Assembly (NCBI RefSeq): GCF_022045235.1
Contig: NW_027266343.1
Coordinates: 56,792,001-56,856,000 of the forward strand
Length of the DNA: 64,000 bases
Direction: 5' to 3'
Source of the DNA: Haliotis cracherodii
Taxonomy: Eukaryota
Of this stretch, positions 27,144 to 63,811 are shown piece by piece; the first letter of the stretch is position 1; each line of letters begins with the position of its first letter. The notes beneath the pieces are model-generated. The model did no database searches. It was not told the origin of the DNA and saw only the letters and a list, made by a program, of their open reading frames with translations. A program made the position numbers and the translations under genes.

Positions 27144-27706
27144 TCAGAATGATGTTGGACTGAACACATTGACATCCTTATTTTGCACATCCATTTTCTT
27201 TTTGCCACCAAATAACCACTGATTGAATTCCGATGTCATTGAAACTCTGGACAAATTCGCTTCATTATACTCATGTTCAGTTGTTAATGTCACAGATTTT
27301 TTTCCCATCTGATCAGACATTTTCTCTGCAGATGTCCTGGTCATTGTACCACTGTTGTTGGGCTCGACAACGGAGTTATCTCCCTTCAGCTGCAGTGCAC
27401 TTGCTACTGACTGGAACAGCGAGGATTCAGAGCCTCTGCGAAACATTCTTGCGTTTGGCAGAGACAGGTATCTGTTCACCTCAGCTTGATGAGCTTTTTG
27501 AAATAGCTGGACAGTTTCTACAGACGAGGGGTGTACTTCAATGCTCCCATGAGGGGAACTCCCATCAATACCAACTCTCTTGGAATCAGTCGATGTTGCA
27601 AGCTGTTGCTTCAGTCTCTCGCCGCTGATCTTGCAGGGATTTCTCAGGATTATTTTTGGTGCACCACATTCTGTCGACTGCAGCTGATACGATTGTTGGC
27701 CAACAT
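27144..27706 (-). CDS. KIAA1191: KIAA1191 / p33MONOX-like protein, last coding exon
   Basis: Acceptor ttttgtttctgaag at 27707; open frame to stop; C-terminus KDVNVFSPTSF resembles vertebrate KIAA1191 RDLNVLTPTGF; also SVETVQLF, SVASALQLK and QWLFG blocks; position next to ARL10. Confidence 0.72.
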
Positions 27707-27779
27707 CTTCAGAAACAAAAGAAAAACAATAAGATAGTTATCATATAACCATAGCAATAGTTAGCGCAATTTGACATAA

Positions 27780-27975
27780 NNNNNNNNNNNNNNNNNNNNN
27801 NNNNNNNNNNNNNNNNNNNNNNNNNNNNNNNNNNNNNNNNNNNNNNNNNNNNNNNNNNNNNNNNNNNNNNNNNNNNNNNNNNNNNNNNNNNNNNNNNNNN
27901 NNNNNNNNNNNNNNNNNNNNNNNNNNNNNNNNNNNNNNNNNNNNNNNNNNNNNNNNNNNNNNNNNNNNNNNNNNN
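27780..27975. other. Assembly gap (196 N)
   Basis: Run of N inside the KIAA1191-like intron. Confidence 1.
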
Positions 27976-29445
27976 GTGTCTGCATGTGCGTGTGTCTTGC
28001 TTTACGCTGCACTCAGCAATATTACAGTTATATGTCAACAGCCTGTAAGTAATTGAGTCTGGACCAGACAATCCAGTGATAGATATCAGGAGCAAAGATC
28101 TGGGAACGATGACATGCTATCAACCAAGTTACCCAATCTGACCATCCATTATGCCTTAAGATGACCATCAGATGTTATTCTAACCCAGAATCTAGCAGCA
28201 AATACTCATAAAACATCAAATACAGGAGTTCTATACTTAAGATTAAACATTTGATACACATTTTCAAATGGTAAATCCTGTTAGTGAGGCAGTTGTTGTT
28301 GTATTACCCTGGATGTAAATCACCTTGTCATGTGACAGATTAGAATGATGTCATGCGTATTGTTAGACAAACAGTTCCATGCAAAACAGTTACCATTCCA
28401 GTGGCAGAAACTAACATTATTAGCCCACTAGTCATTATAACGATAACACATAGCAAAACCCTTAAAATGACAATTTCTACAAGTTCTTATGATACCTTAA
28501 CTATTGGGCAGTTTGGCGAGACTATAGGACTAGTGCTAATTTCTAATGCTGTATTCCTGGAATACGCTTTGGTTATCATGTCAGAGACAGCATTATTCCA
28601 GTAACGGGGAAACAGAAGAACGTCCGCTGGTGTACATTCAAAGATATCATTTTCAAGAATTGATAGATATTTCGTATAAAGTTCTACGGTTTGAACAATC
28701 AAACGATTGTATTGGAAGACAAATGTTTTACCTTCAAATACAAACAAAACTATGAAGACACATATTGAGCAACCAAGTGACCTGAGGCATTGCAAGTAGC
28801 TGGGTTGATCATGACCCCAGGCTTCAACTGTAGCAGATTTACCAGGCTCGTCCCTAATTAGCCAGGGAATTCAGGATTTATCCAGCATTCAAAGTAAGTG
28901 TCTTTGGCAAGTATTTTGAGATATAAGAATCGTGATTTTGTTCCAAATTGGATATTTCAAGTGTTCATATTTTCGAAAATTCTGGCGAAATAAATGTTTA
29001 GATTAAATTGGGAATATTTACTGTCATTTGCTTGGGGGATGAACATCAGCCTCTTAGCAAGTCTACATAAGTCTGGTATTATATTTCACTTCTTTTGGTG
29101 CAAATACCCTGTACCCACTTGCTCAAATAGCTTTGTCTGATTCCAATTCAAATGAAGCTAAAAACAGCTGTCCAATCACATAACATCCATGTGCAAGAGA
29201 AATCCTATGCAAAGTTCATGATTAAACACTGCCCCTACACTGTTGGTCCGAGACAAGTGAAAACCTAGCAGGACTAGTTGTTTTCCCCAAGAACTGAGGA
29301 ATGTGACATTACCCAAAAGTGGGAATGGAAAAAAAATCACTGGACTGTCCAGGATTGACTAGACTAACGTATAGTCAATGAAATCTTAAATTACACAATA
29401 CGCTTCTCTCTAAAAGAATTTTTTTTTTTAAATTCTTATTTCCTA

Positions 29446-29716
29446 TAGCTATTACTATATTCATCAACAACCCGATCTGTGTTGAACCAATCAACTCAAC
29501 TTGAAAGGGTGCACAGGAATCACGTACCCATGAATACGGTGTTAGCGTTGGGCGTCTCAACGTGAGTGATTCCCGTGCACCATTTCGAGCTGAGTTGATT
29601 AGTTCAACTGTGTCATATGGCCCTGTGACGCAGGGGTAGCAGATGGCTGTTACAATGAAGGCTCGTTCCACCCGTGATGAACAGGTCTGGTTGTTGATGA
29701 AATATAGTGATAGCTA
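29446..29716. mobile_element. MITE with terminal and internal inverted repeats
   Basis: TAGCTATTACTATATTCATCAACAACC / GGTTGTTGATGAAATATAGTGATAGCTA plus an inner about 45-bp inverted pair. Confidence 0.7.
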
Positions 29717-30297
29717 AATAGACAGATTTTTTATTCATGCACTGATTGTCTTTAAATGTAATATCCAGTTATGCATGACTGTTTAATAATCTCATACCAA
29801 CTTTGACTGGAGTAGGTCCGATAGTCTTTCAGATATTGTAGTAAACGTTGGTACCTTAAATTACCTTCCAGACTATAGGTTAGCAGAAAAATATTGATGT
29901 TAAGGGTGACTACTACTCTTCAAACCTTAGAGGCCAAACCTTGTTGACAATTTCAACTATAATATTTATCAATAAAGTCATGAACGTGATCTAAAAAACA
30001 GATTAATGTCCTTGCACATTAATGATAGTAAAACACAAAACAGTATCAAATAACAAATTTTGGAACCAGAATTTTCATGTTAAATATGTGAGGTGGATGT
30101 TGGAAAATCCAAGATGGCTGTTACTGATGGTATACGGTCTCATATTAGGTCAGTAACAACCATCCTGGATTTTTACTGACGGTATACAGGCTCATGTGGG
30201 GTCATTAGCTCTGCTCTCTGATTGGTCAGTCTCATTTTGAGGCTTGTGAACCATGGCATCCAAAGTAGTTTGCTCGACTGAGATGAAAACATGTTGA

Positions 30298-30931
30298 AAC
30301 AAGACAAAAAGTGAGCAGGACTCACTAATTCCCCAGACTTCGACTCCAATATATTTCTAAGTTTAAAACATGAAAAAAGCAATATTTTCTCAGAAAATCA
30401 AATCATCAAAATCAAACTTTGCACTGCACCTCTCCTGTTATAGTAAAGAAACTGTACCCCCCATTCGAAAAAAATCCACACAGTAGTTTTGAAGTTATAG
30501 GTCACACAAATGTTGAAGTAAAAAAATATTCTACGTCCAAATCATGAAAAAAATCTTTCGTTTTTCAGAAAATTCCATTGTAATTAAACTTTGCACTGCT
30601 TTCTTCCGTTAGCATGGAAAAAGTTCCCTAAATTTGAAAAGAATCCATCAAGTAGTTGTCTAGTTATAGGTTGCACAAATGTGTCAGGAAAACAAAATTA
30701 AGTTAAAAGATAAAAATAGCTGTATTTTTTTCAGAAAAACAAACAAATATTGAAATCAAACATTGCACTGCACCTCTCCTATCGAAAAAAAATGTTCACC
30801 AATTTTGAAAAGAATCTACATAGTAGTTTTCAAGTTATAGGTCTCACACAAAAATGTCCTGGGAAGGACGGACGATGGACGGAATTCCTTGGTATAACTA
30901 TATATCCCCGCCATATTAGGTCGAGGTATAA
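30298..30931 (+). mobile_element. Helentron/HINE (DINE-1/pearl-like) non-autonomous element
   Basis: AACAAG start, three internal about 175-bp core repeats (..TTGCACTGCACCTCTCCT..AGTTATAGG..), GGAC microsatellite, terminal hairpin then TATAAT. Confidence 0.6.
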
Positions 30932-32094
30932 TAGTAAATATCCAATTCCTCAACACAAACCTCAGTAAATGTGCATTAATACTGCACTCCTGTCTGTGCT
31001 CCAAGGAATCACGCTTCAGTTAGACAACTGAAGTCACTTGTTCTCATAAATCTGAATCTTGATCATCACTGACTGTCCAATGTAATTTCTCTCCATCCCA
31101 AATGAGCTTGTGTGGACTTCTTGATTTCCACTAGTTCTTTGTACAGATCAACCCTTGAGCAACTGATTTGACCTCTTCCCAGGCATGCATGGCCAATTCT
31201 TAGGCAACCATGTTGCATAAGGTAGGCCAACTTGCATCATGCGATGTCACATCTTGTCAAGTTGTGCTTGCTTCAGAGGTAATGAGAATCTGATTGGCAA
31301 GTCACAAGCGTAATCTATTTACATGGCTCCCCAACTCACTGAATGAAGTAATATTTGTGCCTGCGTGATTGTGCAGTGTAGATCTCGACCCTGGCTAACA
31401 TTTAGCCCCATAAATAAAGTTATCTCTACCTAAAAATACATCAATAAAATCTGAATGGAGCCCAGAACAAAGCTTAGTTTCTGAGACAATGGGGCTGATG
31501 TAATCTAGACTTGCTGAATCAGTCTAGGCTTCAGTTGGATTCATATTTTAATGTATTCTCTGGGGTCTGGGAGATGGATTTATGACACCATGGCCAAGGC
31601 AAAATGATAGGAATTAGGAAATCTGCATCACTGATTAATTAGCAGTCAGCATGGATTCCCAGTTTAACTCCCACAACGTGTAACAAATTGTTATTTGACG
31701 CAGCACTCAGCAACATCCCATATGAAAGCAGCCTGTAAATACGAGTCTGGACCAGACAATCCAGTGATCATTATTGTGATCAATGATCCATGCTTTCAGG
31801 GTATGATGACATGCATTGAACAAGTCACTGAGCCTGACCAACCAATCCACTTAAATGGAAGCAAGCACAATCAGTGATAATGTAAGTCCTGGCTTCCAGT
31901 TGTCCGTAACTATCAGTGCTAATCCTGCTGATTACTGTAAAGTGTTGGCTTCCATTGTCTATTGCTAATCACCTATCAGCGCCAATTATCTGGTGGCTTC
32001 CCTTGTTAAGTTTCCGTCCTTTCTTATTGTATTACTTTTGTTGTTCTTACAGTACATATATAAGCTTCTTGCCTCATAGCATACATTCGTCCCA

Positions 32095-32565
32095 AGCACA
32101 TTCAGTTCGCTTGCCTGATGGTCAGTCAGTATTCACGGCTGAATTGGAGGCAATTCATCATGCACTCAAACTCATACCGAAACTTCCAGAAGCAAAGGCA
32201 GCAGTCTTATCAGACTCGCTAAGTGCACTTCAGGCCATCAGCGGCAGAAACTCAACCTCCAGGCCAAACACAGTCAACAATATTCTATACATATATACAA
32301 AACTATCGGACCAAGGGCAACAGGTCGGGCTGTGTTGGATCCCCTCTCACATAGATATACATGGAAATGAAAAAGCAGACTCAGTGGCAAAGCTAGCTGT
32401 AGACAAAGCGGAGATACAGCCTATTCCCTTAAGTAAACTAGAGATAAAAATCAAAATCAAAGCCTCTATTGCCCAAAGATGGCAAGCCCAATGGGACGCA
32501 AGTAAGATCGGCAGATGGCTATACAAAATTCAACCCGAGATCCAACAAAAGCCAAACTCATACTC
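32095..32565 (+). pseudogene. RNase H fragment of a non-LTR retrotransposon (I/Nimb-like)
   Basis: SVFTAELEAI, LSDSLSALQAI, WIPSHIDIHGNEKAD and WQAQWD motifs; no RT upstream; cut off by the element starting at 32566. Confidence 0.85.
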
Positions 32566-32996
32566 CAGAGCTACCGATAAGCTGCATATTTGCGTAAAAT
32601 ACTCCCCAAAAATATTTTAAACTCAATTACTTTCAATCATCTTGTGTACATAAACACGTGTATTAAATGAAAAACTCCAATGTATAAAAACAGCACGCGT
32701 AAAAACCCAATGAAGCTTTTTCAGCACGCGTACAACAGAGCTAATTTCCGAAACACAATTACGAGCTAATTTACCTCCCAAGTCAAGCCTATATTTAGAA
32801 CCATCATATACATCTAAAACTTTATTTAATTTTTTTTTAAATCTCAAAATGTTAACTCATTTTGGGAAAAACCTAATACAGTGATGATTAGATGATTAAA
32901 ATAATATAGGTTACCCAATGAAAAATGTAAAGACACAATTAAAATAGAAACCTGCGAGTAAAAACTCAATTGCTTGAAAAATTTATCTGGAGCTCT
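32566..32996. mobile_element. MITE family F (CAGAGCT termini)
   Basis: CAGAGCTACCGATAA...TTATCTGGAGCTCTG; reverse copy of 34855-35260. Confidence 0.8.
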
Positions 32997-35260: not shown

Positions 35261-35352
35261 TAAATGACACATTTATTTCCTTTTGTGACTTGACACAGTT
35301 CAGTTTCAGTCACTCGATGAGACAAGACTGTTATTTGACAAGAAAACATATA

Positions 35353-35641: not shown

Positions 35642-35667
35642 TAATGCCTTTTTCGTTTATCACATAC

Positions 35668-35872
35668 CTTTTATTTTTTCGTTCTCCTGCAGACTATGAA
35701 ATTTGCTTTTTCTTGGCTCAAACTTGATTGGTACTGGGAATTCGTGTGGCGGAGGAGAATGTGCAAGTATATCATCATCCTCAAACTGGCTGTACCGATC
35801 ACCTCCCCGACAAATGTTGAAAACGCTGCCAGTTGATTGGTCACTAGACGGCAGGCACCTGTTGTTACTCAT
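35668..35872 (-). CDS. KIAA1191: KIAA1191 / p33MONOX-like protein, first coding exon
   Basis: ATG 35872 after an in-frame stop; EDDDILAHSPPPHEFPVPIKFEPRKSKFHSL resembles the KIAA1191 D-rich/PPP/KYQHL block; donor AAAG|gtatgt is phase 1 and joins 27706 in frame (255 aa total); exon acceptor at about 36025. Confidence 0.7.
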
Positions 35873-36180
35873 TGTGACAGACTATTTCTGCATGCGTCAT
35901 AAGACCCTTGCGAGCAAGTACTCCCCGGAGCCCATCCCTCTACAGTCACCTGGATGTATTGCGGAGCATATTCTTGCTGTCATTTGCCTGATCTTGATTG
36001 TAGCTGTAGTTGGGGAGCTAAACTCTGCAAAAAGATCATCACATATCAGATTTATGAAGATGCAAACCTATGAATTGAATCTGACAGAATACATGTTTTA
36101 CACGATGCAGCACACATGCAGAAAAAATTAATGCGTCCTGGTGGAACCACAATGATATTCATTGTACCAACAATGAATCA

Positions 36181-36682
36181 CATCTTCTCGAGGCAAGGAC
36201 GTTAACGTACTATAAAAGTCCACTTTCCACCCTTGCCAAACTACTCTGGCATTCCATGCATAGTCTATAGGAGTCTTTGCATAGTCCAATCAAAATCGTG
36301 TTATGAACTAGACATCCGGTTCATAAACATTGATTTCAACATGCAGATTTCAGTCGACTGCAGGATTTGCAAAGCATGTGTACCGTCAACTGGGCATTGA
36401 CAGATATTTTCAAAATCTTTTCATGTTTTTAATTAAGTTGCTCAAGTGAACTGATGAATTTTGCAAAGATAAGGCCCATTTTATGACAATATAGATCTTT
36501 TTGACTGGGCGCCACCAATTTTGTTTGAAGCAAATGCAAGTGATATGAGAGATGGAATCTGATAGACCAAAAGGATGGACATACAAGGGACATAACTCAT
36601 AATAACCACTACGATCAAGGCTGGAAATTCCAGCAAAGGTGGAAAGTGGACTCTTATTTAAAGCCCTTGTCTCGGGAAGATG
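36181..36682. mobile_element. MITE family G (CATCTT..AAGATG ends), opposite orientation to 56940-57478
   Basis: Inverted ends; interior is the reverse complement of the 56940 copy. Confidence 0.7.
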
Positions 36683-37027
36683 AACGAATCTTTGACATTG
36701 TTAAGAGTGTTTGTTGTTGTTTCTTTGGAATAATCTTCACTAATTTACAACAGACTTGAATTAAATTTATAGATTCAGTCTGTAGTGCATGGCTGGAAAT
36801 GTCTGTTGATTTGCAGCATATTTAGTTTTCCGGTAACTACAAATACCTACAAAGACTGAGCCCTGGACCCCAGCCTTTCTCAGTCAAGGGGAACCCTGAA
36901 TGCGTATGTCCCTCTGAAGGAACTCAGGGTTACTGAACATTGTGACAATTGTTGCTTTACAAAGATAATAAAATATGGCGTTGAAAAACCTGGCAAGACG
37001 CTTCATAGAGAAATGCTAAAGATACAA

Positions 37028-37278
37028 GTGAGTGAGTGCATTCAGGTTATATCGCGGCATGTCAGCTTAATGTGGGAGGAAAGCCCGAAGTGATGTGTGT
37101 CTCAGATGTTTACCACTTCGGTGAAACACACGAGCATGAGTAGGTGCCGACAAACCTTGAAACATAATCGGAGGGAACCAGGATTCGAACCCACAATTAT
37201 AGTTTTCTGGTCTGCCCAAGGGACACAACTCTGCACAGCAAAATGCAGCACCTTAGACAACTGGGCCACCTGTGCCCC
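37028..37278 (-). mobile_element. SINE family C copy
   Basis: Similar to 24253-24544. Confidence 0.75.
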
Positions 37279-37962
37279 TCTATAGATACAAGACTCATAA
37301 CCCTAATTGAGGAAGAGGAAAAGAAGAATATTAGAAGAAAGTACACATGCATCAATGAGGATGAGGTGAACATGGTCATTGCTATCTGAAGCTGAGATTT
37401 ATATAGACCAGTTCAGAGGCTGATTGTCAGCAGAGATCAGTAAAAATTCCATAATGTGAATAAGAAATTTTCCAGTACTTATGTTATATTTATAGCTTTA
37501 CAGAAGTGACTTCTAGTTTATTGATAACAGGACCAACACAGAGAAAGTGTCTTTAATACTTAGTTTTACATAATTGTATTGAATACAATGTTAATATATT
37601 TCTGATTTTGAGAAAATAGAAACTTCAAAGAAATGCCAATTTTGAAAAAAATATCATTGTTTTTCCAATGTGCCTGCCAAAAGAACTTGTTTGGAATAAC
37701 AGAAAAAAAACCCTGCTGAAAGCATGGTAATATTCTCTAAGTCTTCAAATAGATCTTGATGTGATGAGAAAGTTCCATATAGACCTTGCATGTTACCACA
37801 GTATGATGTTTGATAACATTGAGGGCATGGATGGCCTCGTCATCAAAGGTGTCGCAATTTGCTGTGACGAGTTAAATTGTGTCCCTTGAACAAGCTATAA
37901 ACTTTTGATTGTGGGTTTCCAATTCCGGTTCACCCCAGTTATGTTTCTATGTTTGTCAGCAC

Positions 37963-38327
37963 TAGGGTTGGGACAATACACCAACTGTATGATCCAATAT
38001 GTACCATGATACCTTGCACACGATCCGATACGTATCGCGATACTTGCATGTGCACTTATCGGTGGTGCGTAAGCCATCCTTTTCATAGACAGGATTGCCA
38101 AATACCCGGCACACTAATGATTAACAGTTGGCAGTGTCGCATATGGTGCTATGGATGAAAATATTTACGTTTTCACTACTCATTTTCACTAGTAATTAGT
38201 GTTTGGTGAACACTCATTTAAGGTAAGAATCAATACTTTTTACTTAGTGTGTGACTGTGATTGATTCTTGCATCTAGAAGTAAATAATCGCAATCCACAT
38301 ATTTATCGGTTTATCATCCCACCACTA
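37963..38327. mobile_element. hAT MITE
   Basis: TAGGGTTGGGACAAT / ATCATCCCACCACTA ends with perfect 8-bp TSD GTCAGCAC. Confidence 0.85.
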
Positions 38328-40048
38328 GTCAGCACCATACCAATGGCCGTGGAATTCAACAATACACCCCCCCCCAGCCCCACCCCCCCCAAAAAAGACA
38401 CCGCCCGCCAGCATGCACTATATTTTCAAAAAAACATTACCTGAGAACCAATTCTTTTAATTTTTTTTAAGCCTTAGATGCAATTTCATATCAATTATCT
38501 ATAAACTACAGACACACTATAATGCTTTTATTTGTGCACGAACATACCCAATCTCTGAAATGTAAATAACCCACTGGGCTAGTTGATCCTCTTCATCTTT
38601 TTTATATACCATCGGCACTGTTTGCTTTATTTTATCACGGAACTCCAGAGAACTTTTTGAGCAATTGAGTTTCAAGTGTTGTCCTAGGTTCATGCATCAG
38701 GGTCACAACACTGTGCGAATGTTTCTTCCCGATCCACGAGCTGGACACTTTTACTTAATATTGCAGAGCTCCAGATAAATTTTTCGAGCAATTGAGTTTT
38801 TATTTGACGGTTTCTGTTTTAATCGGTTCATTATATTTTTCATTGGGTAACCAATATTTTTTTACTCATCTATTCATCACTCTATTGTGTTTATTAGTCA
38901 GCAAACAGTCGGAGTCACAAGAGACCAATTACAATTTTATTTACAACTGATATAAGAACACCAAACAATATCTTAAGTATAGATGAGGGTGACACAGAGC
39001 GTCGGTACAACCCTCTGGCTATGGGTGAGAGGTCTGCTTGGTTTGAGCGTCAAAACCCTCTGGCCTAACATCTTGCTTCTGTATGTATTTAACTAAAATT
39101 TAGAAGAAAAAAAAGGAATATCATTAGTTGTTGATACACAATGGGGTGTGCCCTTGGGTTAATGAATGGCTAGACAGAGGGGAATACATATTCCTGTTAG
39201 ACTGTCACTAATCTTGTTGACATATCTACTGGGTGCTTGGAAAGAGATAATGATATCACAATAGACAAGCTTGTGTGGGGCTAACCCTTAATGAGTCTAA
39301 ATTGAAGTATTTGCTGAATGTTATTCTAATATATAGGTGATGACAGATTTACTTTAATAAAATAGTTCAAGGCAATCTATAAAACTATCTACGCATAACT
39401 TTTGTTTTATTGAAAAGTATGTCTCAGAGATGCATTCTTGTTACCTTAGGCTACTATCTACCTAAAAGCTATAACTGAAACTACTAATATTTTGTATCTG
39501 TATTTTTCCTGGATCCTAATATGTATTAGTCACAGGGCTGTAGGGTGGGTGATTTAACTGTACAGCCCAGACTTAGCCCCCAGTTACTATTTCCTGTTCC
39601 GGCAAAAGAAATCTGCCCTACGTGGAAGATGCTTCCAGGATGACAAGGACAGAAAAGCTGCCACAGAGGTGTGGTGAGAGGGCCAATATAAAAGTGGTAT
39701 TAAAAGCTTGAAGGACAAATGGAATAAGTGTATTGAGGTGAATGGAGATTATATTGTAAAATAAAAGTGCCAAGATATTCTGCGACTTGGTCTTATATTG
39801 AAGTTGCAAAACTTATTGAACACCCCTCGTATATTAATTTCAATAAAATTTTATATGTTAAAATGAAAAGGAGATCTTTTATTGATTATTTTATAACAAT
39901 TGTCCACACTGAAGAATTTTGTAGTGCCACTGACAATATCAGAAACAGCTGAGTTGTCATGTCTTATCGGGAACCTAATTCTTGTTATACCGTTACATAG
40001 ATCTAGATACCTCCGTAGATTATACAAGGAAACTCTCATAACACTCAC

Positions 40049-41557: not shown

Positions 41558-41713
41558 ATGGAGGTCGCTGGAGTACTGAAAAGCGCGCTGACTTCAAAAC
41601 CGGCTGCATATGTTATTGGTGGAACAACTACGCTAGCTGCAGCATATGGTCTTTATAAGTTGTGGCTGTATATGAGCGAAGAAGATGAATATTTTGAGAA
41701 ATTACACACGAGT
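41558..41713 (+). CDS. ARL10: ARL10-like (ARL9/10) small GTPase, exon 1 (N-terminal TM segment)
   Basis: aacATGg start; hydrophobic AAYVIGGTTTLAAAYGLYKLWLY then acidic EEDEY; donor AGT|gtgagt, phase 0. Confidence 0.75.
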
Positions 41714-44844: not shown

Positions 44845-44886
44845 TTGTGCAATCATCATGCCATGCTGAGGTTTCTCCTGTTGCAG

Positions 44887-46113: not shown

Positions 46114-46114
46114 T

Positions 46115-49100: not shown

Positions 49101-49238
49101 TCCCCTTTCAGCTCTAGCAGCCTATACTCATCCCCTTTCAACTCTAGCAGCCTATACTCATCCCCTTTCAGCTCTAGCAGCCTATACCCATCCCCTTTCA
49201 GCTCTAGCAACCTATACTCATCCCTTTTCAGCTCTAGC
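46115..49238. repeat. 30(-31)-bp minisatellite CTATACTCATCCCCTTTCAGCTCTAGCAGC, about 100 units, in ARL10 intron 3
   Basis: Direct periodicity. Confidence 0.97.
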
Positions 49239-49239
49239 T

Positions 49240-49790
49240 GTGGAGTTCGTCCATGCTTCCGTTAGTCTGTACATCCATCTGTCTGTCCATCCTTCCAAGG
49301 GCACAAGTTTTCTCAAAAACTATTTTAAATTAGAGAATTGAAGTTTACACACTGATATTACTGGTCATGATCTTAAATGAGTTCAATTTTTTACAGAGTT
49401 ATGGCCCTTGCTCCGAGCTTTTAAACTAATTACGTAGTGTCTGCAATTGGGACAAGTTTTCTCAGAAACTTCTGAAGTTATATGAATGATACTTTCCATG
49501 CTTATCTAAGAGATACTTAGACTGAGTTTGAAAATTGGTGCCAGTAATTATTTTTTACAGAGTTATGCTCCTTGCTTCATGCTTTTCAACTTTGTGCCTA
49601 GTGTCTGCAATTGGGATAAGTTTTGTCAGAAAGCACTGACGCTACATGAATGAAAGTTTGCATGCTTATCTATGAGATACTGTGTTCCAAAATTGGTCCT
49701 GTAAAATTATTTTTTGCAGAGTTACTTCCCTTGCTACATGTATTTTAGATTGTGAGGACAAGCCACTGTCAGTTAGGCGGGACATGAAAA
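49240..49790 (-). mobile_element. HINE-like non-autonomous element remnant
   Basis: TCCA/GTCT microsatellite followed by three core repeats containing AAGTTTTCTCAGAAA..CAGAGTTATG. Confidence 0.5.
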
Positions 49791-49802
49791 GACACAGTAA
49801 AG

Positions 49803-52010: not shown

Positions 52011-52308
52011 CAGTCTGTTCTCCTTTCAGGACAAGCCACTATCAATCAAGTCAGACTTGGTGCACACCTGTGTTCATGTTGACCACAGTGTGAAGCCCCA
52101 CTCACTCACTCACTCACTCACTCACTCACTCACTCACAGTCTGTTCTCCTTTCAGGACAAGCCACTATCAATCAAGCCAGACTTGGTGCACACCTGTGTT
52201 CATGTTGACCAGAGTGTCATCCCACTCACTCACTCACTCACTCACTCACTCACTCACTCAGTGTCAAGCGCCTGTTCATTCACTCACAATAGTCTGTTCT
52301 CGTTGCAG

Positions 52309-52494
52309 GACAAGCCACTATCAATCACGCCAGACTTGGTGTACAGCTACATGCAAGTGGACAACTTTGCCAAGACCCGTCCAATCCACCTTGTCTCAGT
52401 CCAAGCACCAGACCGTGGCCAGCGCAAGGGATTCATGGAAACATATCGTATCTTTGAGAGTCTTCAGAAGAGGCGGAGACATAAGTCAGCTTGA
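52309..52494 (+). CDS. ARL10: ARL10-like GTPase exon 4 (last coding exon)
   Basis: Completes TKQ|D; DKPLSITPDLVYSYMQV..RPIHLVSVQA..GFMETYRIFESL*; four exons give 232 aa. Confidence 0.8.
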   Translation, partial: DKPLSITPDLVYSYMQVDNFAKTRPIHLVSVQAPDRGQRKGFMETYRIFESLQKRRRHKSA

Positions 52495-53304: not shown

Positions 53305-55050
53305 TAGTGAAAGAGGGGATCTACATGGTCCAGATCCTTCCCTATATCTAGTGAAAGAGGGGATCTACATGGTCCAGATCCTTCCCTATATCTAATGAAA
53401 GAGGGGATCTACATGGTCCAGATCCTTCCCTATATCTAGTGAAAGCGGGGATCTACATGGTCTAGGTCCTTCCCTATATCTAGAGAAAGAGGGGATCTAC
53501 ATGGTCCAGGTCCCTCCCTATATGTAGTGAAAGAGGGGATCTACATGGTCTAGGTCCCTCCCTATATCTAGTGAAAGAGGGGATCTACATGGTCTAGGTC
53601 CCTCCCTATATCTAGTGAAAGAGGGGATCTACATGGTCCAGGTCCCTCCTTATATCTAGTGAAAGAGGGGATCTACATGGTCCAGATCCCTCCCTATATG
53701 TAGTGAAAGCGGGGATCTACATGGTCTAGGTCCTTCCCTATATCTAGAGAAAGAGGGGATCTACATGGTCCAGATCCTTCCCTATATCTAGTGAAAGAGG
53801 GGATCTACATGGTCCAGATCCATCCCTATATGTAGTGAAAGAGGGGATCTACATGGTCCAGATCCATCCCTATATGTAGTGAAAGAGGGGATCTACATGG
53901 TCCAGGTCCCTCCCTACATGTAGTGAAAGAGGGGATCTACATGGTCCAGGTCCTTCCCTATATCTAGTGAAAGAGGGGATCTACATGGTCCAGATCCATC
54001 CCTATATGTAGTGAAAGAGGGGATCTACATGGTCCAGATCCATCCCTATATGTAGTGAAAGAGGGGATCTACATGGTCCAGGTCCCTCCCTACATGTAGT
54101 GAAAGAGGGGATCTACATGGTCCAGGTCCTTCCCTATATCTAGTGAAAGAGGGGATCTACATGGTCCAGATCCTTCCCTATATCTAATGAAAGAGGGGAT
54201 CTACATGGTCCAGATCCTTCCCTATATCTAGTGAAAGCGGGGATCTACATGGTCTAGGTCCTTCCCTATATCTAGAGAAAGAGGGGATCTACATGGTCCA
54301 GGTCCCTCCCTATATGTAGTGAAAGAGGGGATCTACATGGTCTAGGTCCCTCCCTATATCTAGTGAAAGAGGGGATCTACATGGTCTAGGTCCCTCCCTA
54401 TATCTAGTGAAAGAGGGGATCTACATGGTCCAGGTCCCTCCTTATATCTAGTGAAAGAGGGGATCTACATGGTCCAGATCCCTCCCTATATGTAGTGAAA
54501 GCGGGGATCTACATGGTCTAGGTCCTTCCCTATATCTAGAGAAAGAGGGGATCTACATGGTCCAGATCCTTCCCTATATCTAGTGAAAGAGGGGATCTAC
54601 ATGGTCCAGATCCATCCCTATATGTAGTGAAAGAGGGGATCTACATGGTCCAGATCCATCCCTATATGTAGTGAAAGAGGGGATCTACATGGTCCAGGTC
54701 CCTCCCTACATGTAGTGAAAGAGGGGATCTACATGGTCCAGGTCCTTCCCTATATCTAGTGAAAGAGGGGATCTACATGGTCCAGATCCATCCCTATATG
54801 TAGTGAAAGAGGGGATCTACATGGTCCAGATCCATCCCTATATGTAGTGAAAGAGGGGATCTACATGGTCCAGGTCCCTCCCTACATGTAGTGAAAGAGG
54901 GGATCTACATGGTCCAGGTCCTTCCCTATATCTAGTGAAAGAGGGGATCTACATGGTCCAGATCCATCCCTATATGTAGTGAAAGAGGGGATCTACATGG
55001 TCCAGACACCCCCCATGTGTAATTGGACAAGGGATCTACATGGTCCAGAT
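53305..55050. repeat. 44-bp minisatellite TAGTGAAAGAGGGGATCTACATGGTCCAGATCCTTCCCTATATC, about 39 units, with a 792-bp higher-order duplication
   Basis: Direct periodicity; the rare TCTAATGAAA variant recurs at 53391 and 54183. Confidence 0.97.
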
Positions 55051-56939
55051 CCTGCTGTGTGTGGTGTTTGTGTAAGTGAAGCAGATGGATCTGGGTGTTT
55101 GTGAAGTGTATGCAAGAGAGTGGTTAATGATTAAACCTTATGCCACAATAACTATACCAAAATTGCTCCCCAAAGTACCGGGCAATACATTGTTGAGGTA
55201 CATTTGTCAGTTTTATATGAACCATATCATAGTCAGCTTGTGTACTTAACAAACCGTATTACAGTGTTTCCTGACTTTATCAGGAGAAAAGAAAGAAGGG
55301 AACATCAGAACTGAAAAAGATTTACAGTTGTTAGTACAGTGAATATCAGTCACAGTGAAACATTAGTATCGAGAGATGGGTATTAGAGGTTTGAAGTGTA
55401 TCACAATATAAGACCTATGTGAAATAACCCTATATACCGAGCATTTAAACATATTATTGTGATATGTATCCTGGAAAAATTGAACCTCAATATTCTGATA
55501 TATCGGTAATACGTCTCACCCTTATTTGTATCAGGTTTGCACTCTGTCAAACACATGCTTGTCGTTCCCTTATGTCTTACATAATTATTCTGTATACACA
55601 ACAGAAGCATTGTCCTGTGAAAATCAATGATCAGACAATCATCCTATGGTGTTGTTACAGCATCCATGGCCTTGTGGGCAAAGCTTGTACCTGGTAGGTT
55701 GGTGGTTCAATCACCGGCCTCGTCATTCCGCAAGACGTTAAAATATGTTACACACACACATAAGTGCATGGCTGTCGCTTTATACCGTAAATGGGATAAT
55801 CTTGAACGTGTCATTAAACCCCATTTCCCACCTCATTGTTACTAGTTTATGCACAGTTTGTTACATGAGCAGCATTTATCCTGTTTTTACACTGTTATTG
55901 CATCAGCGTCCGTTGTGAATGTCACCAGTTTGTTACACTGTGATTCTGTCCAAAGGTGGACGTTGCTCCACTAGGACTTGTAGCATATAATGTAATAGTA
56001 TTTCAACATGTAAGAATAGGCATTTGTTTGGGTATCATTGTTAAAGGTCAGTAAGTTCACCACTTTTTTTTATACTTATCAAAACCTTGATGATTTTGAT
56101 TTACTGCAGTATTGTTCTGCTGTTCGTGAGTTGTGTCTAGCGCCGCTTTTAACAGTTTTCCAGTCATATCACGGCGTTGTTCTGCTGTTATAAGTGTATG
56201 TTTGTTTCCTTGTCTGTAAGTAAACCTTTTACCCATCTGGAACATTTGTTTTAAAAAAATGTATATGCCAAATGCCATTATGTAGAAACATTTGAAAAGC
56301 TCAAATGCATCAATTAATGCAGTCTACACGTCATCACTAGCATGTTGATAAGCTGAAAATAAAGATATTTGTTTAAAGTTTACTACCTTTATTTATTTTT
56401 CTAACAGGAATATTAGGACTGCAGGTCAAGTTGATCTTAGATTTGCCAACAGTCTGGGGTTTGCGAGTTTTGTTTAATGTGTCTTCGAGATGTTTGAACA
56501 GTATTCCAGTTACATCACGGTGTGTCAGTTTGATGTGGGAGCAAAGCCAGAAGTGATGCAGGACAGGGATGTGTACCACTTTGGGGAAACAAACAAGCAC
56601 AGATATGTCTCTGACAAACCAGGGAACATAATCAGGGCAAATCTGGGATTCAAACCCAAGGTCATAGATTTGTGGCAGGCATAAATGATACAACACATGA
56701 CACAGAGATTTGTAACACCTTATACAGCTTGTCTACCACTGATTGCCTCTCACAACCATCCACTTAGACTGTTGCATGATGTTCCAGCTATCATCCCCGG
56801 TAGGCTGTCCCAGATCACATCCCACAACCACCTGGGGCAAGGGTGGTCTGTTTTTATAAGGTCCCACAATTTGCTGTGCAGAGTTGTGTCCCTTGGGTTC
56901 ACCAGAGACCAAAGATTGTGGGCTTGAATCATGGTTCAC

Positions 56940-59341: not shown

Positions 59342-59702
59342 TAAGTAAGGATAATAATTTATTGATGAACAACTTCTTTATTACAATTAAGAGCGACGTT
59401 ATGGTGTAGATTCTAACACCGTTATCAAGCAAGTGATCACGGTGTTGATAACGGTGTAGATTCTAACTCCGATATCAAGCAAGTGATCACGAAGTTGATA
59501 ACGATGTAGATTCTAACACCGTTATCAAGCAAGTGATCACTTGCTTGATAACGGTGTTAGAATCTACGACGAAATGTCGCTCTTAATTGTAATAAAGTAG
59601 TTGTTCGTCACTTGCTTGATAACGGTGTTAGAATCTACACTGAAACGTCGCTCTTAATTGTAATAAGGAAGTTGTTCATCCATAATTTCTAATCCTTACT
59701 TA
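59342..59702. mobile_element. Penelope-like pseudo-LTR remnant arranged as an inverted repeat, with minimal hammerhead-like motifs
   Basis: Arms are reverse complements; TTGATAA-C-GGTGT..ACACT-GAAA-CGTC followed by AATAA, the layout of PLE termini. Confidence 0.6.
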
Positions 59703-59940
59703 CATGCTTACACACCACTCTCTGCATGAACACACACTTTCTTTTTGTAATATATATTCTCAAAGTTATGGCTTGTTATAATACCAAGTCTATAAATTAC
59801 AATTACAAGCCCCTCTTCAATGCCAATATTCCATGTGTTTGTGTCAGGAATACTGTCTGTGTTTTAAAGCCCACATGAGAGGTGCAATGATTACGACCGC
59901 ACATCTACACACTGTGAACACTCTTGAACATCCATGTACA

Positions 59941-60119
59941 TCAGTTCGCAGGCTTCTTCTTGGCCTTCATGGCGCTGTAGAAGACCCCGCCCAACACAGC
60001 ACACAAAGTGAACCCTTGGGCACCAATCCTCATTCGCATCATGGTCTGTGATCGACGTGTGTTCCCGGTCTTCATTTGCCACAGACCATATGTTAGGGCA
60101 AGGGTTGTCAAGGCAACAC
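59941..60119 (-). CDS. HIGD2A: HIG1 domain family member 2A, exon 2
   Basis: GVALTTLALTYGL..GNTRRSQTMMRMRIGAQGFTL: HIG1 (Q)X3(R)XRX3Q motif; acceptor ttttcag. Confidence 0.93.
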
Positions 60120-62254: not shown

Positions 62255-62408
62255 CTATAGGAACAAATGGATTGTCCTTCGTTTTCCTGATAAACTTCTC
62301 TTTCAAACCCTCTTGGTAATAGCCAAGTTCTTCTCTTGGTGGTGGTAAATATGCATATTCTTGAGGTGGAGGCTTCTGTACTATCTCTGACTCTGTAGAG
62401 GTCGCCAT
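62255..62408 (-). CDS. HIGD2A: HIG1 domain family member 2A, exon 1
   Basis: aaaATGg start; EGLKEKFIRKTKDNPFVPIG typical of HIGD2A; G|gtatat donor, phase 1; 110 aa total. Confidence 0.92.
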
Positions 62409-62923
62409 TTTAGAATACAAAGAAGTTGCACAGGAATAAGGATCCGGAAGTTATCCAGTTATGATTTCACAAAACCGGCATCTATCGGCTTATGATAAGC
62501 ATTGTGACATTGCTTTATGGTATTTTATGGAAAAAAATTGATTCAAAGTGTAAAAACCATACACCAATGTTTATACCATCAAGTATTACATTTGTTTCCA
62601 CCGCTGTACTGGTCTCACATTTTGATATTGTAAGATCATCGGAAACATCCGGTTGGAAAATAGTAAAAGGGATCATAGCGGTATTTGATTGTTATAAATA
62701 TGGATATATTTCTTTTGAGAATAAAAGTATGTTACAGTTAGATAGCGCTATCTTTGTTAAAATTTAAGCAGTATGATGTAACAGTCGTAGTTTGTTTAAC
62801 CTCAATTAAAACACTTAGTGTGTTTATTTGTTTCGGAAGTTATTCCATATTTTGTCATACCCATAGTCGCGTCCTTGAGCACGTGTTGATGTTTTGCTTG
62901 AAGAAATACTCTGTGACAGAACC
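62409..62923. promoter_or_regulatory. Bidirectional promoter HIGD2A / NOP16
   Basis: Start codons 515 bp apart, head-to-head; ETS-like CCGGAAGT (62444), ACATCCGG (62645) and TCGGAAGT (62833); YY1-like CGCCATTT over the HIGD2A ATG. Confidence 0.7.
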
Positions 62924-63024
62924 ATGACGAAAATACGAAAACAGAGCAGAAATAAGACTTACAACTATACCAAAGACCGGAAAAGAAGTTGGAAAAACAA
63001 AAACAAACTACAAAAAATAACATG
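62924..63024 (+). CDS. NOP16: Nucleolar protein 16, exon 1
   Basis: accATG; MTKIRKQSRNKTYNYTKDRKRSWKNKNKLQKIT(C), a basic N-terminus; requires the GC donor TG|gcaagg. Confidence 0.8.
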
Positions 63025-63317
63025 GCAAGGCTGTTAGAAATGTTTATGCAGTATAATTTACTATAAGTCAGGGCCTCATCGCAGGAGAACTTTATTTAAC
63101 GTGCTGAAGTAGGTACATATAGACGTCGTTCAGGCTAACTGAAAGACGAGTAGTGCACAATTTCAGTTAGAGCCACGTCCTTTAACTCTAGGAGTAGCAC
63201 TTCCAAAGATGAATGGATGAGGGGATATACAGGAGTTTGAACAAATGCTAAAATATTACAAAAAAACCAACTAAACGATGAAAAGTTAAAGATTCTTTAC
63301 CTCGATAGACGTGTCAT

Positions 63318-63584
63318 CCCGTGAAGATCCGATTTGGATTAGGCCATCAGCAACCCATGCTTGCTGTGAAAGGCGACTATTGTTGTCATAAAAGGCGACT
63401 AACGGGATTCGGTGGTCAGGCTTGCTGACTTTGATTGATGTATGTCATCGTGTCCCAGTTGCGTAGATCAATGCTCATGATGTCAATCACTGGATTAAAT
63501 TGTCTGGTCCACACTCGATTATTTTCAGACCGCCATCATATAGCTGGAATATTGCTGAGTGTGGCGTTAAACAACAAACAAACA
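63318..63584 (+). mobile_element. SINE family A copy in NOP16 intron 1
   Basis: CCCGTGAAGATCCG head and (AAAC)n tail. Confidence 0.85.
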
Positions 63585-63702
63585 ATTAGTTTTTCTGGTC
63601 AAATACCTGAAATGGGTTGACGAGAAATCAGTGTGTTTTGGCTTTGACTTTTTGGGGGCTGGGATGTCAGTTTATTTTGTATAATGTTCAAACATTTTTC
63701 AG

Positions 63703-63811
63703 TGAGACTGTAAGTGAAGCTTGGGATGAGAAGAAGTCTGTAGCACAGAACATGCAGGACATGGGGCTGTCAGCGGACTCCAACCAAACCATAAGGATCC
63801 CCAAAACTAAG
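63703..63811 (+). CDS. NOP16: Nucleolar protein 16, exon 2 (gene continues beyond the window)
   Basis: ETVSEAWDEKKSVAQNMQDMGLSADSN matches the Nop16 WD..S..QN...MGL..D.N signature; tttttcag| acceptor and AAG|gtgtgc donor. Confidence 0.9.

What the first reader, a model, noticed from the sequence alone, without database searches (positions are those of the whole stretch)
27144..63811. Four-gene block KIAA1191-ARL10-HIGD2A-NOP16 apparently conserved with human 5q35.2
Seen: KIAA1191-like(-), ARL10-like(+), HIGD2A(-) and NOP16(+) are consecutive, with no other host gene detected between them, as two head-to-head pairs. Recalled knowledge: in human the adjacent order is KIAA1191(-), ARL10(+), NOP16(-), HIGD2A(+). 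Both divergent pairs are kept and only the HIGD2A/NOP16 pair is inverted as a unit. Inference: if this is a mollusc, four unrelated genes have stayed linked since the bilaterian ancestor despite heavy repeat invasion. That suggests shared bidirectional promoters and possibly a co-regulated module linking mitochondrial proteins (ARL10, HIGD2A) with ribosome biogenesis (NOP16), and gives a guilt-by-association lead for the poorly understood KIAA1191. I do not know whether this block has been reported.
Basis: partly seen in the sequence, partly recalled or inferred. Interest (0 to 1): 0.85.

Follow-up and report, generated by a model that had tools for sequence, protein, structure and literature searches.

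The report
Ancient gene neighbourhood kept in abalone
In black abalone, a mitochondrial-type small GTPase gene (ARL9/10), the back-to-back pair HIGD2A/NOP16 and a THEG gene sit side by side as their counterparts do in mammals, an ordinary case of deeply conserved gene order, while the fourth gene claimed (KIAA1191) could not be confirmed.

Summary
The window is Haliotis cracherodii, chromosome-scale contig C80.

Three are confirmed:
- An ARL9/10-type GTPase with four exons.
- A type-2 HIG1 gene whose best match is human HIGD2A. The genome's only other HIG gene best matches HIGD1A.
- The genome's only NOP16 locus, which runs about 7 kb past the window end.

The fourth is a real, single-copy, two-exon gene for a 255-aa polar, low-hydrophobicity protein. 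No search links it to KIAA1191/P33MONOX. The resemblance is a few short motifs recalled from memory.

The assembly gap is intronic, 74 nt upstream of the exon-2 acceptor.

Spliced transcript contigs from four runs confirm the HIGD2A and NOP16 models. The two transcripts come within about 200-260 bp of each other (ATG to ATG 515 bp), which is bidirectional-promoter architecture. Human NOP16/HIGD2A is a listed divergent pair. The KIAA-like/ARL pair is 5.7 kb apart with CpG-depleted DNA between, so no shared promoter is indicated.

About 4 kb beyond NOP16 lies a THEG-repeat gene, one of two in the genome. In cattle and goat, ARL9 and THEGL are adjacent. This fits a neighbourhood that predates the vertebrate ARL9/ARL10 split.

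Verdict: real ancestral microsynteny of a known kind. A co-regulated four-gene module is not supported.

The parts
27147..27706 (-). Gene 1 ('KIAA1191-like', NCBI model P0005, annotated as uncharacterized), coding exon 2, aa 69-255. Stop codon at 27144-27146.
   Evidence: tblastn of P0005 at 99.5% identity. Canonical AG acceptor at 27707-27708. Single copy in the genome.
27780..27975 (.). Assembly gap inside gene 1's intron, 74 nt upstream of the exon-2 acceptor. Not filled.
   Evidence: Gap coordinates and exon boundary.
31916..32620 (+). RNase H / RT-like retroelement fragment inside gene 1's intron.
   Evidence: Pfam RNase_H E 1.7e-8 and RVT_3 E 2.5e-5.
35669..35872 (-). Gene 1 coding exon 1, aa 1-68, ATG at 35872. 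It holds the most conserved N-terminal stretch among Haliotis species.
   Evidence: tblastn of P0005 at 100%. GT donor. Alignment A2.
35873..41557 (.). 5.7-kb spacer between the two divergent start codons of gene 1 and the ARL gene. Mostly CpG-depleted. One patch with little or no CpG depletion lies upstream of the ARL start codon (40900-41699); another (35300-35699) lies mostly in gene 1's intron 1, just inside the gene.
   Evidence: CpG observed/expected 0.0-0.7 across the middle, 0.87-0.99 at 40900-41699 and 1.41 at 35300-35699. No Pfam-recognisable ORFs.
41558..52494 (+). ARL9/10-type GTPase gene (P0001, 232 aa). Coding exons 41558-41713, 43643-43817, 44887-45068 and 52309-52491, followed by the stop codon. 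Intron 3 is filled with 30-bp and 41-bp satellite arrays.
   Evidence: tblastn at 100%. GT-AG boundaries. Pfam Arf E 8e-34. Nearest named Atlas clusters are ARL9 at 0.96 and ARL10 at 0.95. WDVGGS is invariant in six molluscs. Satellite arrays.
53305..55053 (.). 44-bp satellite array in the tail-to-tail spacer between the ARL gene and HIGD2A.
   Evidence: Tandem Repeats Finder.
59700..60119 (-). HIGD2A orthologue, exon 2. Coding part 59944-60119, stop codon 59941-59943. The 3' UTR reaches at least to 59700.
   Evidence: Pfam HIG_1_N E 1.1e-16. Best solved-structure match is human HIGD2A at E 9e-13, against HIGD1A at 6e-6. Transcript contigs.
62255..62633 (-). HIGD2A exon 1. Coding part 62255-62408, ATG at 62408. 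The 5' UTR reaches at least 62633.
   Evidence: The joint 60117/62253 (GT..AG on the minus strand) appears in all four runs, and contigs reach 62609-62633. Best match is human HIGD2A residues 32-52.
62634..62828 (.). Shared divergent promoter region. This is the part not covered by the listed transcript pieces of either gene, at most about 200-260 bp. It shows no CpG depletion.
   Evidence: Contig extents. CpG observed/expected 0.9-1.1 against 0.42 for the whole window.
62829..63024 (+). NOP16 exon 1. The 5' UTR starts at or before 62829. Coding part 62924-63024. The donor is GC, giving a GC-AG intron at 63025-63702.
   Evidence: The joint 63023/63702 appears in all four runs. Sequence. The junction codon reads Cys, followed by the conserved motif of exon 2.
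63703..63812 (+). NOP16 exon 2. The gene continues past the window end to about C80:56863223.
   Evidence: Pfam Nop16 positions 27-59. Best solved-structure match is human NOP16 at E 1.9e-4. Later exons match Pfam positions 148-184 and 184-210. This is the only NOP16 locus in the genome.

Best explanation
This stretch is a surviving piece of an ancestral bilaterian gene neighbourhood: ARL9/10, then the pair HIGD2A/NOP16, then THEG. An unidentified disordered-protein gene sits on the ARL side.

The core is the HIGD2A/NOP16 pair. The two genes are transcribed divergently from one short, CpG-undepleted promoter region. A breakpoint would have to fall within a few hundred bases and would damage one or both promoters, so the pair is hard to separate and has stayed together in both molluscs and vertebrates.

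The flanking linkages (ARL to the pair, the pair to THEG) are most likely passive remnants of ancestral order in two slowly rearranging lineages. The pair has been inverted as a unit relative to the ARL gene.

In vertebrates the neighbourhood was duplicated. One copy (human 5q35.2) kept ARL10, NOP16 and HIGD2A. The other (human 4q12) kept ARL9 and THEGL.

Shown here: gene identities, order, orientation, splicing and the closeness of the two transcripts. Inferred: common ancestry of the order, promoter sharing as the cause of retention, and the duplication-and-loss history.
For: Species and gene models.

ARL9/10 identity:
- Pfam Arf E 8e-34.
- Nearest named Atlas clusters are ARL9 at 0.96 and ARL10 at 0.95; the next family scores 0.90.
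- Ser replaces the catalytic Gln in an invariant WDVGGS, there is no Gly2, and the most hydrophobic segment is N-terminal. Published ARL10 traits match these.
- Vertebrate Arl9 and Arl10 are in-paralogues of one invertebrate Arl10.

HIGD2A identity:
- Both exons best match human HIGD2A, at E 9e-13 and 1e-3, contiguously at residues 52/53.
- The genome's only other HIG locus best matches HIGD1A.

NOP16 identity: collinear Pfam matches at one locus only, with human NOP16 as the best solved-structure match.

Transcripts: spliced contigs in four runs show HIGD2A intron 60120-62254 and NOP16 intron 63025-63702. HIGD2A reaches at least 62633 and NOP16 starts at or before 62829. CpG observed/expected is about 1 there, against 0.42 for the window.

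Mammals:
- NOP16/HIGD2A is a listed human divergent pair with TSS distance -15.
- Cattle order is ARL10, NOP16, HIGD2A, CLTB.
- A 297-kb human 5q35.2 segment holds all three genes.
- The rat Higd2a and Nop16 promoters were both among the five targets shared by SRY and SOX9.

THEG: Pfam E 1e-20, about 4 kb beyond NOP16, one of only two THEG loci in 1.18 Gb. ARL9 and THEGL are adjacent in cattle and goat.

General framework: conserved metazoan pairs are enriched in 5'-5' orientation and short spacers.
Against: - Only two lineages are compared (one mollusc genus and mammals).
- A 64-species survey listed the NOP16/HIGD2A pair only for chicken, human and mouse, so it may be absent or undetected in many lineages.
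- The runs are only guessed to be RNA, and contigs cannot show true transcript starts. Promoter sharing is therefore inferred from architecture, not measured.
- Clathrin light chain, the next gene in mammals, lies on another abalone contig.
- Mammalian gene order comes from gene lists in papers, and strands are from memory.
Confidence: 0.72

Rival explanations
1. All four genes (KIAA1191, ARL10, HIGD2A, NOP16) form one selectively maintained, co-regulated module with two shared bidirectional promoters, linking mitochondrial function to ribosome biogenesis.
For: - Both pairs are head-to-head.
- HIGD2A/NOP16 has bidirectional-promoter architecture.
- ARL10 is mitochondrial in human cells and HIGD2A is mitochondrial (title).
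- Conserved 5'-5' pairs often share regulation.
Against: - The fourth gene's identity is unproven.
- The start codons of gene 1 and the ARL gene are 5.7 kb apart. CpG-depleted DNA lies between two separate patches that show little or no CpG depletion.
- The human KIAA1191/ARL10 pair is not in the divergent-pair list that holds NOP16/HIGD2A.
- The HIGD2A/NOP16 pair is inverted relative to the ARL gene between lineages, so any regulation across the block has been rearranged without loss of the genes.
- No expression correlation was tested.
Confidence: 0.1
2. Gene 1 is a true but very diverged KIAA1191/P33MONOX orthologue, so the conserved block has four genes on the 5q35.2 side (five with THEG). 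The protein keeps only short linear motifs.
For: - Position and orientation, head-to-head with the ARL gene, match my recollection of human KIAA1191(-)/ARL10(+).
- Size (255 aa) and a polar, low-hydrophobicity make-up.
- The protein evolves fast even within the genus: 65-66% identity to its H. rubra and H. asinina orthologues, against 91% for the ARL protein in H. rubra. A blank search is therefore expected.
- Four collinear short motifs are invariant in Haliotis (A2): 35690-35758, 27492-27521, 27204-27218 and the C-terminus at 27147-27176. They resemble, from memory only, motifs in the human protein.
Against: - No Pfam P33MONOX hit at E<=10 for three Haliotis proteins.
- The family was not detected in the genome.
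- The exhaustive phmmer and word-seeded searches found only Haliotis proteins.
- The protein Atlas ranks Jupiter-like disordered proteins first, and no P33MONOX cluster was shown among its hits.
- The gene has two coding exons. I recall that the human gene has more.
- Using position as evidence is circular for a synteny claim.
Confidence: 0.5
3. The shared order is a chance or convergent re-association, not ancestral retention.
For: - Only two lineages were compared.
- The 2010 survey saw the NOP16/HIGD2A pair in amniotes only.
- Genes on one ancestral linkage group can become neighbours again by chance.
Against: Three separate adjacencies coincide: ARL with the pair, HIGD2A with NOP16, and the pair with THEG through the ARL9 paralogue.

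An order-of-magnitude estimate (my inference, with assumed numbers): take roughly 1,000-1,500 genes per chromosome. Each adjacency then has a chance of about 1-2 in 1,000, even if all the genes are confined to one chromosome. Over about 20,000 starting points, far fewer than one such block is expected per genome.

NOP16 is single-copy, and HIG and THEG have two loci each.
Confidence: 0.05

Closest known systems
Human and vertebrate NOP16/HIGD2A divergent gene pair (5q35.2)
   Same: The same two gene families, head-to-head, with a very short spacer. Human TSS distance is -15 bp in the divergent-pair list. In abalone the transcripts come within about 200-260 bp and the start codons are 515 bp apart.
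   Different: Earlier surveys list the pair for chicken, human and mouse only. Here it is in a gastropod mollusc. The pair's orientation relative to the neighbouring ARL gene is reversed.
Conserved ancestral microsyntenic pairs of metazoans (Irimia et al. 2012, PMC3514665), for example HSPD1/HSPE1
   Same: Non-paralogous neighbours kept across phyla, enriched in 5'-5' orientation with short spacers, and explained by shared cis-regulation.
   Different: I could not check whether this pair or block is in their list, because the supplements are not held. Coexpression and multi-species presence were not tested here.
Metazoan Arl10 family, split into Arl9 and Arl10 in vertebrates (Vargova et al. 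2021; Quirion et al. 2024)
   Same: Arf-family domain. An N-terminal hydrophobic segment instead of a myristoylated Gly2. Ser instead of the catalytic Gln. One gene in an invertebrate.
   Different: The hydrophobic segment is only moderately hydrophobic (Kyte-Doolittle 1.0-1.6). It is followed by an acidic DEYFE stretch, not the polybasic stretch described for human ARL10. The NKxD motif reads TKQD. No phylogeny was made.
P33MONOX / KIAA1191 family (Pfam PF15302)
   Same: A small, polar (probably disordered) protein encoded head-to-head with the ARL gene, with short motifs that resemble the human protein from memory only.
   Different: No detectable sequence similarity by any tool used.
Mammalian ARL9-THEGL adjacency (human 4q12 region)
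   Same: An ARL9/10-type gene and a THEG-repeat gene lie in one small neighbourhood.
   Different: In abalone HIGD2A and NOP16 lie between them. In mammals no such genes are listed between ARL9 and THEGL.

Membership tests
Arl10 (vertebrate ARL9/ARL10) subfamily of ARF GTPases | ARF-family GTPase domain | tested here: met
   Pfam Arf E 8.2e-34, residues 48-205 of P0001. Exons match the window at 100%.
Arl10 (vertebrate ARL9/ARL10) subfamily of ARF GTPases | N-terminal transmembrane or hydrophobic anchor instead of a myristoylated Gly2 (typical for Arl10; TM at residues 10-31 in human) | tested here: inconclusive
   None of the six mollusc proteins has Gly2. In each, the most hydrophobic 19-mer is N-terminal (residues about 12-50), but its Kyte-Doolittle mean is only 0.98-1.61. 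No dedicated TM predictor was available.
Arl10 (vertebrate ARL9/ARL10) subfamily of ARF GTPases | Catalytic Gln of the G3 motif is missing (Ser in human ARL10) | tested here: met
   WDVGGS is invariant in six mollusc sequences.
Arl10 (vertebrate ARL9/ARL10) subfamily of ARF GTPases | Closer to ARL9/ARL10 than to any other ARF/ARL group | tested here: inconclusive
   Named Atlas clusters: ARL9 0.96, ARL10 0.95 (twice), next other family 0.90. This is a lead, not an alignment-based test. Database names of the mollusc homologues are uninformative. No tree was made because no vertebrate sequences were in hand.
HIGD2A / Rcf1-type (type 2) HIG1 proteins | HIG_1_N domain | tested here: met
   Pfam PF04588 E 1.1e-16 on exon 2.
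HIGD2A / Rcf1-type (type 2) HIG1 proteins | Closer to HIGD2A than to HIGD1, with the paralogue showing the reverse | tested here: met
   Window exon 2: HIGD2A 50.9 bits against HIGD1A 29.5. Exon 1: 22.6 against 15.8. The only other HIG locus (C10): HIGD1A 31.7 bits against HIGD2A 19.9.
HIGD2A / Rcf1-type (type 2) HIG1 proteins | Q-x3-R-x-R-x3-Q motif of type 2 HIG1 proteins (recalled from the literature on Rcf1, not checked in a paper here) | tested here: met
   Exon 2 and human HIGD2A both show Q-x3-R-x-R-x3-Q in the alignment. The HIGD1A line and the C10 paralogue lack the first Q and the first R.
NOP16 (Pfam PF09420) | Match to the Nop16 profile, collinear over the gene | tested here: met
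   Exon matches to profile positions 27-59 (23.6 bits), 148-184 (22.9) and 184-210 (28.0, over the 25-bit cut-off), in order on one strand. Human NOP16 is the best solved-structure match at E 1.9e-4. Exon 1 alone gave no hit, but four runs splice it to exon 2. Whole-protein scoring was left out because joined exons were not to be searched.
NOP16 (Pfam PF09420) | Single-copy orthologue | tested here: met
   All matches in the 1.18-Gb genome lie at this one locus.
P33MONOX / KIAA1191 (Pfam PF15302) | Match to the family profile | tested here: not met
   No hit at E<=10 for P0003, P0004 or P0005. No match in the six-frame search of the genome. That search rang nowhere, the control genomes (all bacteria and archaea) included, so it is a weak negative.
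P33MONOX / KIAA1191 (Pfam PF15302) | Detectable homology to vertebrate members by sequence search | tested here: not met
   Exhaustive phmmer search of the last exon returned one Haliotis cluster only. Word-seeded search of P0003 returned three Haliotis proteins only. The Atlas top hits are Jupiter-like.
P33MONOX / KIAA1191 (Pfam PF15302) | Shared short linear motifs with the human protein | not testable with these tools
   No tool returned a vertebrate KIAA1191 sequence. The resemblance rests on memory.
THEG (Pfam PF14912) | THEG repeats | tested here: met
   E 1.1e-20, 74 bits, two repeats in L014:1289-1633. Three exon matches at C80:56867298-56870880 on the minus strand.
Conserved divergent (bidirectional-promoter) gene pair | 5'-5' orientation with a spacer under 1 kb | tested here: met
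   For HIGD2A/NOP16: ATG to ATG 515 bp, transcript contigs 195-260 bp apart. For gene 1/ARL the feature is not met: 5.7 kb between start codons.
Conserved divergent (bidirectional-promoter) gene pair | The same pair in the same orientation in distant lineages | tested here: met
   Abalone (this window) and human. Also listed for chicken, human and mouse. Only two phyla are covered.
Conserved divergent (bidirectional-promoter) gene pair | Correlated expression or a shared functional promoter element | not tested
   Contig depth cannot rank expression. No CAGE or ATAC data were available.

The most novel reading that the evidence does not exclude
The abalone locus preserves a five-gene neighbourhood that predates the vertebrate duplication: KIAA1191, ARL9/10, HIGD2A/NOP16 and THEG. 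Vertebrates split it by duplication and complementary loss into 5q35.2 (KIAA1191, ARL10, NOP16, HIGD2A) and 4q12 (ARL9, THEGL). On this reading, position identifies the first invertebrate orthologues of the fast-evolving disordered protein KIAA1191 and marks the few motifs that matter in it.
Probability: 0.4. Interest if true: 0.45.

Novelty: new member of a known kind. Interest (0 to 1): 0.3.

Why it matters
- It moves the age of the NOP16/HIGD2A divergent pair from vertebrates, where surveys list it, back to the common ancestor of molluscs and vertebrates. It is a clean, small example of how a shared promoter can lock two unrelated housekeeping genes together.
- The THEG link gives a concrete case of one ancestral neighbourhood resolved into two vertebrate paralogous regions.
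- If gene 1 proves to be KIAA1191, position would supply an orthology that sequence search cannot. It would also point to four short motifs as the functional core of a poorly understood human protein.
- None of this changes current views. Hundreds of such conserved pairs and blocks are already known.

Tried and rejected
KIAA1191 identity. All of these came back blank or uninformative:
- Pfam on the last exon and on three full-length Haliotis proteins.
- PF15302 against the genome.
- Exhaustive phmmer search of the last exon.
- Word-seeded search of P0003.
- The protein Atlas, which ranked Jupiter-like proteins first at 0.85 (a lead only) with no Pfam JUPITER hit to back it.

Gene-order survey in other animals:
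- The one metagenome scan found only a contig of an unidentified GC-rich organism. There, the ORF head-to-head with HIG looks by eye like a short-chain dehydrogenase and no NOP16 was evident among its ORFs. The other hits were two short contigs.
- Supplements of Irimia 2012 and Simakov 2013 are not held.

Other points:
- Naming the ARL gene from database names failed. I set the E-value limit at 1e-10 and got only six mollusc proteins with uninformative names.
- Extending the block to clathrin light chain, the next gene in mammals, was rejected. It lies on contig C1.
- NOP16 exon 1 gave no Pfam or solved-structure hit on its own. Spliced contigs confirmed it instead.
- The human position of KIAA1191 next to ARL10 could not be read from a paper. 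It occurs in the same paper on a 1.86-Mb 5q35.2-q35.3 deletion as the others, but the gene table is not held.
The exons were searched one by one, by reference.
- Reads were laid on HIGD2A/NOP16, so the spacer between gene 1 and the ARL gene has no transcript evidence.

Full report
**Source.** The window is G000:C80:56792001-56856000, part of a 1.18-Gb assembly in 80 contigs. A protein encoded in it is 100% identical to an NCBI protein of Haliotis cracherodii on a 60.1-Mb contig.

**Assembly gap, tested first.** The NCBI model P0005 (255 aa, annotated as uncharacterized) maps to two coding exons on the minus strand: 35669-35872 at 100% and 27147-27706 at 99.5%. The boundaries are GT and AG. The gap at 27780-27975 starts 74 nt upstream of the exon-2 acceptor, so it is intronic and breaks no reading frame. 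I did not fill it. The two exons it separates occur in one protein in H. asinina and H. rubra, which fits the scaffold join. Whatever the gap hides, exon 1 and everything to its right are on the same side.

**Gene 1 ('KIAA1191-like').**
- It is a real gene and single-copy in the genome.
- Its product is polar with no hydrophobic segment.
- It evolves fast. The H. cracherodii protein is 65-66% identical to its H. rubra and H. asinina orthologues, against 91% for the ARL protein in H. rubra.
- No test links it to KIAA1191/P33MONOX:
  - No Pfam family at E<=10 for any of three Haliotis proteins.
  - PF15302 was not found in the genome. This is a weak negative, because nothing rang anywhere.
  - An exhaustive phmmer search of the last exon against 1.8 billion proteins found one Haliotis cluster only.
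  - A word-seeded search found three Haliotis proteins only.
  - The protein Atlas put Jupiter-like disordered proteins first at 0.85, which is only a lead.
- From memory, four collinear short motifs resemble the human protein: 35690-35758, 27492-27521, 27204-27218 and the C-terminus at 27147-27176. All are invariant in Haliotis. No tool gave me a vertebrate sequence, so this remains a lead. I put orthology at about even odds.

**ARL gene.**
- P0001 (232 aa) maps at 100% to four exons with GT-AG introns. Pfam Arf scores E 8e-34.
- Papers say that Arl10 is metazoan and typically has an N-terminal transmembrane region. Vertebrates duplicated it into Arl9 and Arl10. ARL9 and ARL10 lack the catalytic glutamine, which is Ser132 in human ARL10. 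Human ARL10 is anchored at mitochondria by its N-terminal segment.
- The abalone protein and five other mollusc homologues have an invariant WDVGGS and no Gly2. Their most hydrophobic segment is at the N-terminus, though it is only moderately hydrophobic.
- The nearest named Atlas clusters are ARL9 (0.96) and ARL10 (0.95). The next family scores 0.90.
- I file it as the single invertebrate Arl9/10 gene. No tree was made.

**HIGD2A.**
- Exon 2 carries HIG_1_N at E 1e-16.
- Both exons best match human HIGD2A (9i6f_N), at residues 32-52 and 53-105, which are contiguous at the splice junction. The scores are about 7 and 21 bits above those for HIGD1A.
- The genome has one other HIG locus, on C10. 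It best matches HIGD1A. The two genes therefore sort reciprocally.

**NOP16.**
- Pfam Nop16 matches three exons in order on the plus strand. One is in the window and two lie up to 7.2 kb beyond it. There are no matches anywhere else in the genome.
- Human NOP16 is the best solved-structure match for exon 2.
- I inferred exon 1 (ATG at 62924) from the sequence. On its own it gave no hit.

**Transcript evidence.** Contigs from four runs were laid on 59700-64000. The runs are only guessed to be RNA, but the contigs skip introns. One run's listed pieces match the window without a single difference.
- All four runs show the HIGD2A joint 60117/62253, which is GT..AG on the minus strand.
- All four show the NOP16 joint 63023/63702. 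Shifted by one base, this is a GC-AG intron. The junction codon reads Cys, directly before the conserved motif of exon 2.
- HIGD2A contigs reach 62609-62633 and NOP16 contigs start at 62829-62900. The two transcripts therefore come within about 195-260 bp. The start codons are 515 bp apart.
- This spacer has CpG observed/expected of 0.9-1.1, against 0.42 for the window.
- Contigs cannot show true starts, so a shared promoter is inferred from architecture.

**The other divergent pair.** The start codons of gene 1 and the ARL gene are 5,686 bp apart. The DNA between is CpG-depleted. One patch with little or no CpG depletion lies upstream of the ARL start codon and another lies mostly just inside gene 1's first intron. 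There are no recognisable ORFs. I had no reads call left for this stretch. A shared promoter is not indicated.

**Between the genes.** No other Pfam-recognisable ORF was found. The spacers and introns hold satellites of 30, 41, 44 and 126 bp and an RNase H/RT-like fragment.

**Comparison with mammals.**
- Human NOP16 and HIGD2A are a listed divergent pair at 5q35.2 with TSS distance -15.
- Cattle show the order ARL10, NOP16, HIGD2A, CLTB, FAF2.
- A 297-kb human 5q35.2 segment of 11 genes holds ARL10, NOP16 and HIGD2A but not KIAA1191. That fits KIAA1191 lying just outside on the ARL10 side, which I know only from memory.
- The rat Higd2a and Nop16 promoters were both among the five targets shared by SRY and SOX9 in one ChIP study.
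- Clathrin light chain is on another abalone contig, so the shared order ends there.

**New here: a THEG gene next door.**
- About 4 kb past the last NOP16 exon, on the minus strand, lies a THEG-repeat gene (Pfam E 1e-20).
- It is one of only two THEG loci in the genome.
- In cattle and goat, ARL9 and THEGL are adjacent.
- ARL9 and ARL10 are vertebrate in-paralogues. The abalone order ARL, HIGD2A, NOP16, THEG therefore looks like the arrangement before that duplication. One vertebrate copy kept ARL10, NOP16 and HIGD2A, and the other kept ARL9 and THEGL.

**Chance.** Take roughly 1,000-1,500 genes per chromosome (my assumption). Each adjacency then has a chance of about 1-2 in 1,000, even if the genes are confined to one chromosome. 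Three coinciding adjacencies are expected far less than once per genome. I therefore take the shared order as ancestral. This rests on two lineages only.

**Mechanism.** The HIGD2A/NOP16 core is best explained by a shared short promoter, which makes separation both rare and harmful. This is the known logic of conserved 5'-5' pairs. The flanking links are probably passive. The pair is inverted as a unit relative to the ARL gene between abalone and mammals, so regulation spanning the whole block is unlikely. A functional module joining mitochondria and ribosome biogenesis is speculation.

**What is known.** Conserved metazoan microsynteny and its enrichment in divergent pairs are established. 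A 64-species survey lists NOP16/HIGD2A for chicken, human and mouse only. I found no paper that mentions these genes together with microsynteny. Supplements of the main surveys are not held.

**Limits.**
- The metagenome scan gave nothing useful.
- Spliced models of HIGD2A and NOP16 were searched exon by exon, by reference.

**Verdict.** This is a real, ordinary example of ancient microsynteny. Three of the four claimed genes are confirmed. One further gene (THEG) is added. The fourth claimed gene is unproven.

Noticed in passing
window 14928-23796: An 8.9-kb array of a 21-bp unit (about 422 copies, 88% matches). It has strong negative GC skew (about -0.4), raised G+C (about 0.52), and ORFs of up to 2,701 aa open in several frames as a by-product. 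It separates gene 1 from the sulfotransferase gene.
   Followed up: no
window 8862-9998 (-): A 379-aa ORF without introns that encodes a galactose-3-O-sulfotransferase-like protein (Pfam Gal-3-0_sulfotr E 5.5e-47). I do not recall it as part of the mammalian 5q35.2 neighbourhood.
   Followed up: partly
window 49803-52260: A 41-bp satellite (52 copies) and a 126-bp repeat lie just upstream of ARL exon 4. A stretch at 52027-52095 translates to a 56%-identical copy of the start of exon 4. This matches two other first-reader notes about exon-derived repeats.
   Followed up: partly
window 63025-63702: NOP16 intron 1 uses a GC donor (GC-AG intron). All four runs support the joint.
   Followed up: yes
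window 63300-63587: An element inside NOP16 intron 1 draws enormous summed contig depth in all four runs, with thousands of contigs and many joints and loose ends. It looks like a very abundant, transcribed short interspersed repeat.
   Followed up: no
L017 and L018 (C80:56772001-56792000), minus strand: Several exons of a leucine-rich-repeat gene lie just left of the window (weak Pfam LRR hits). Its first large ORF ends at the window's left edge.
   Followed up: partly
G000:C1:70438263-70438766 (-): The genome's second THEG-repeat locus, with four repeats in one 198-aa open frame.
   Followed up: no
L016:6200-8500 (C80:56892200-56894500), minus strand: ORFs that look by eye like retroelement integrase, RT and gag pieces lie about 20 kb right of the THEG gene. 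Not scanned against Pfam.
   Followed up: no
L010:2760-4307: In a 10-kb microbial-mat metagenome contig from an unidentified GC-rich organism, a type-2-like HIG gene with an intron lies head-to-head with an ORF that looks by eye like a short-chain dehydrogenase. No NOP16 was evident among its ORFs.
   Followed up: partly
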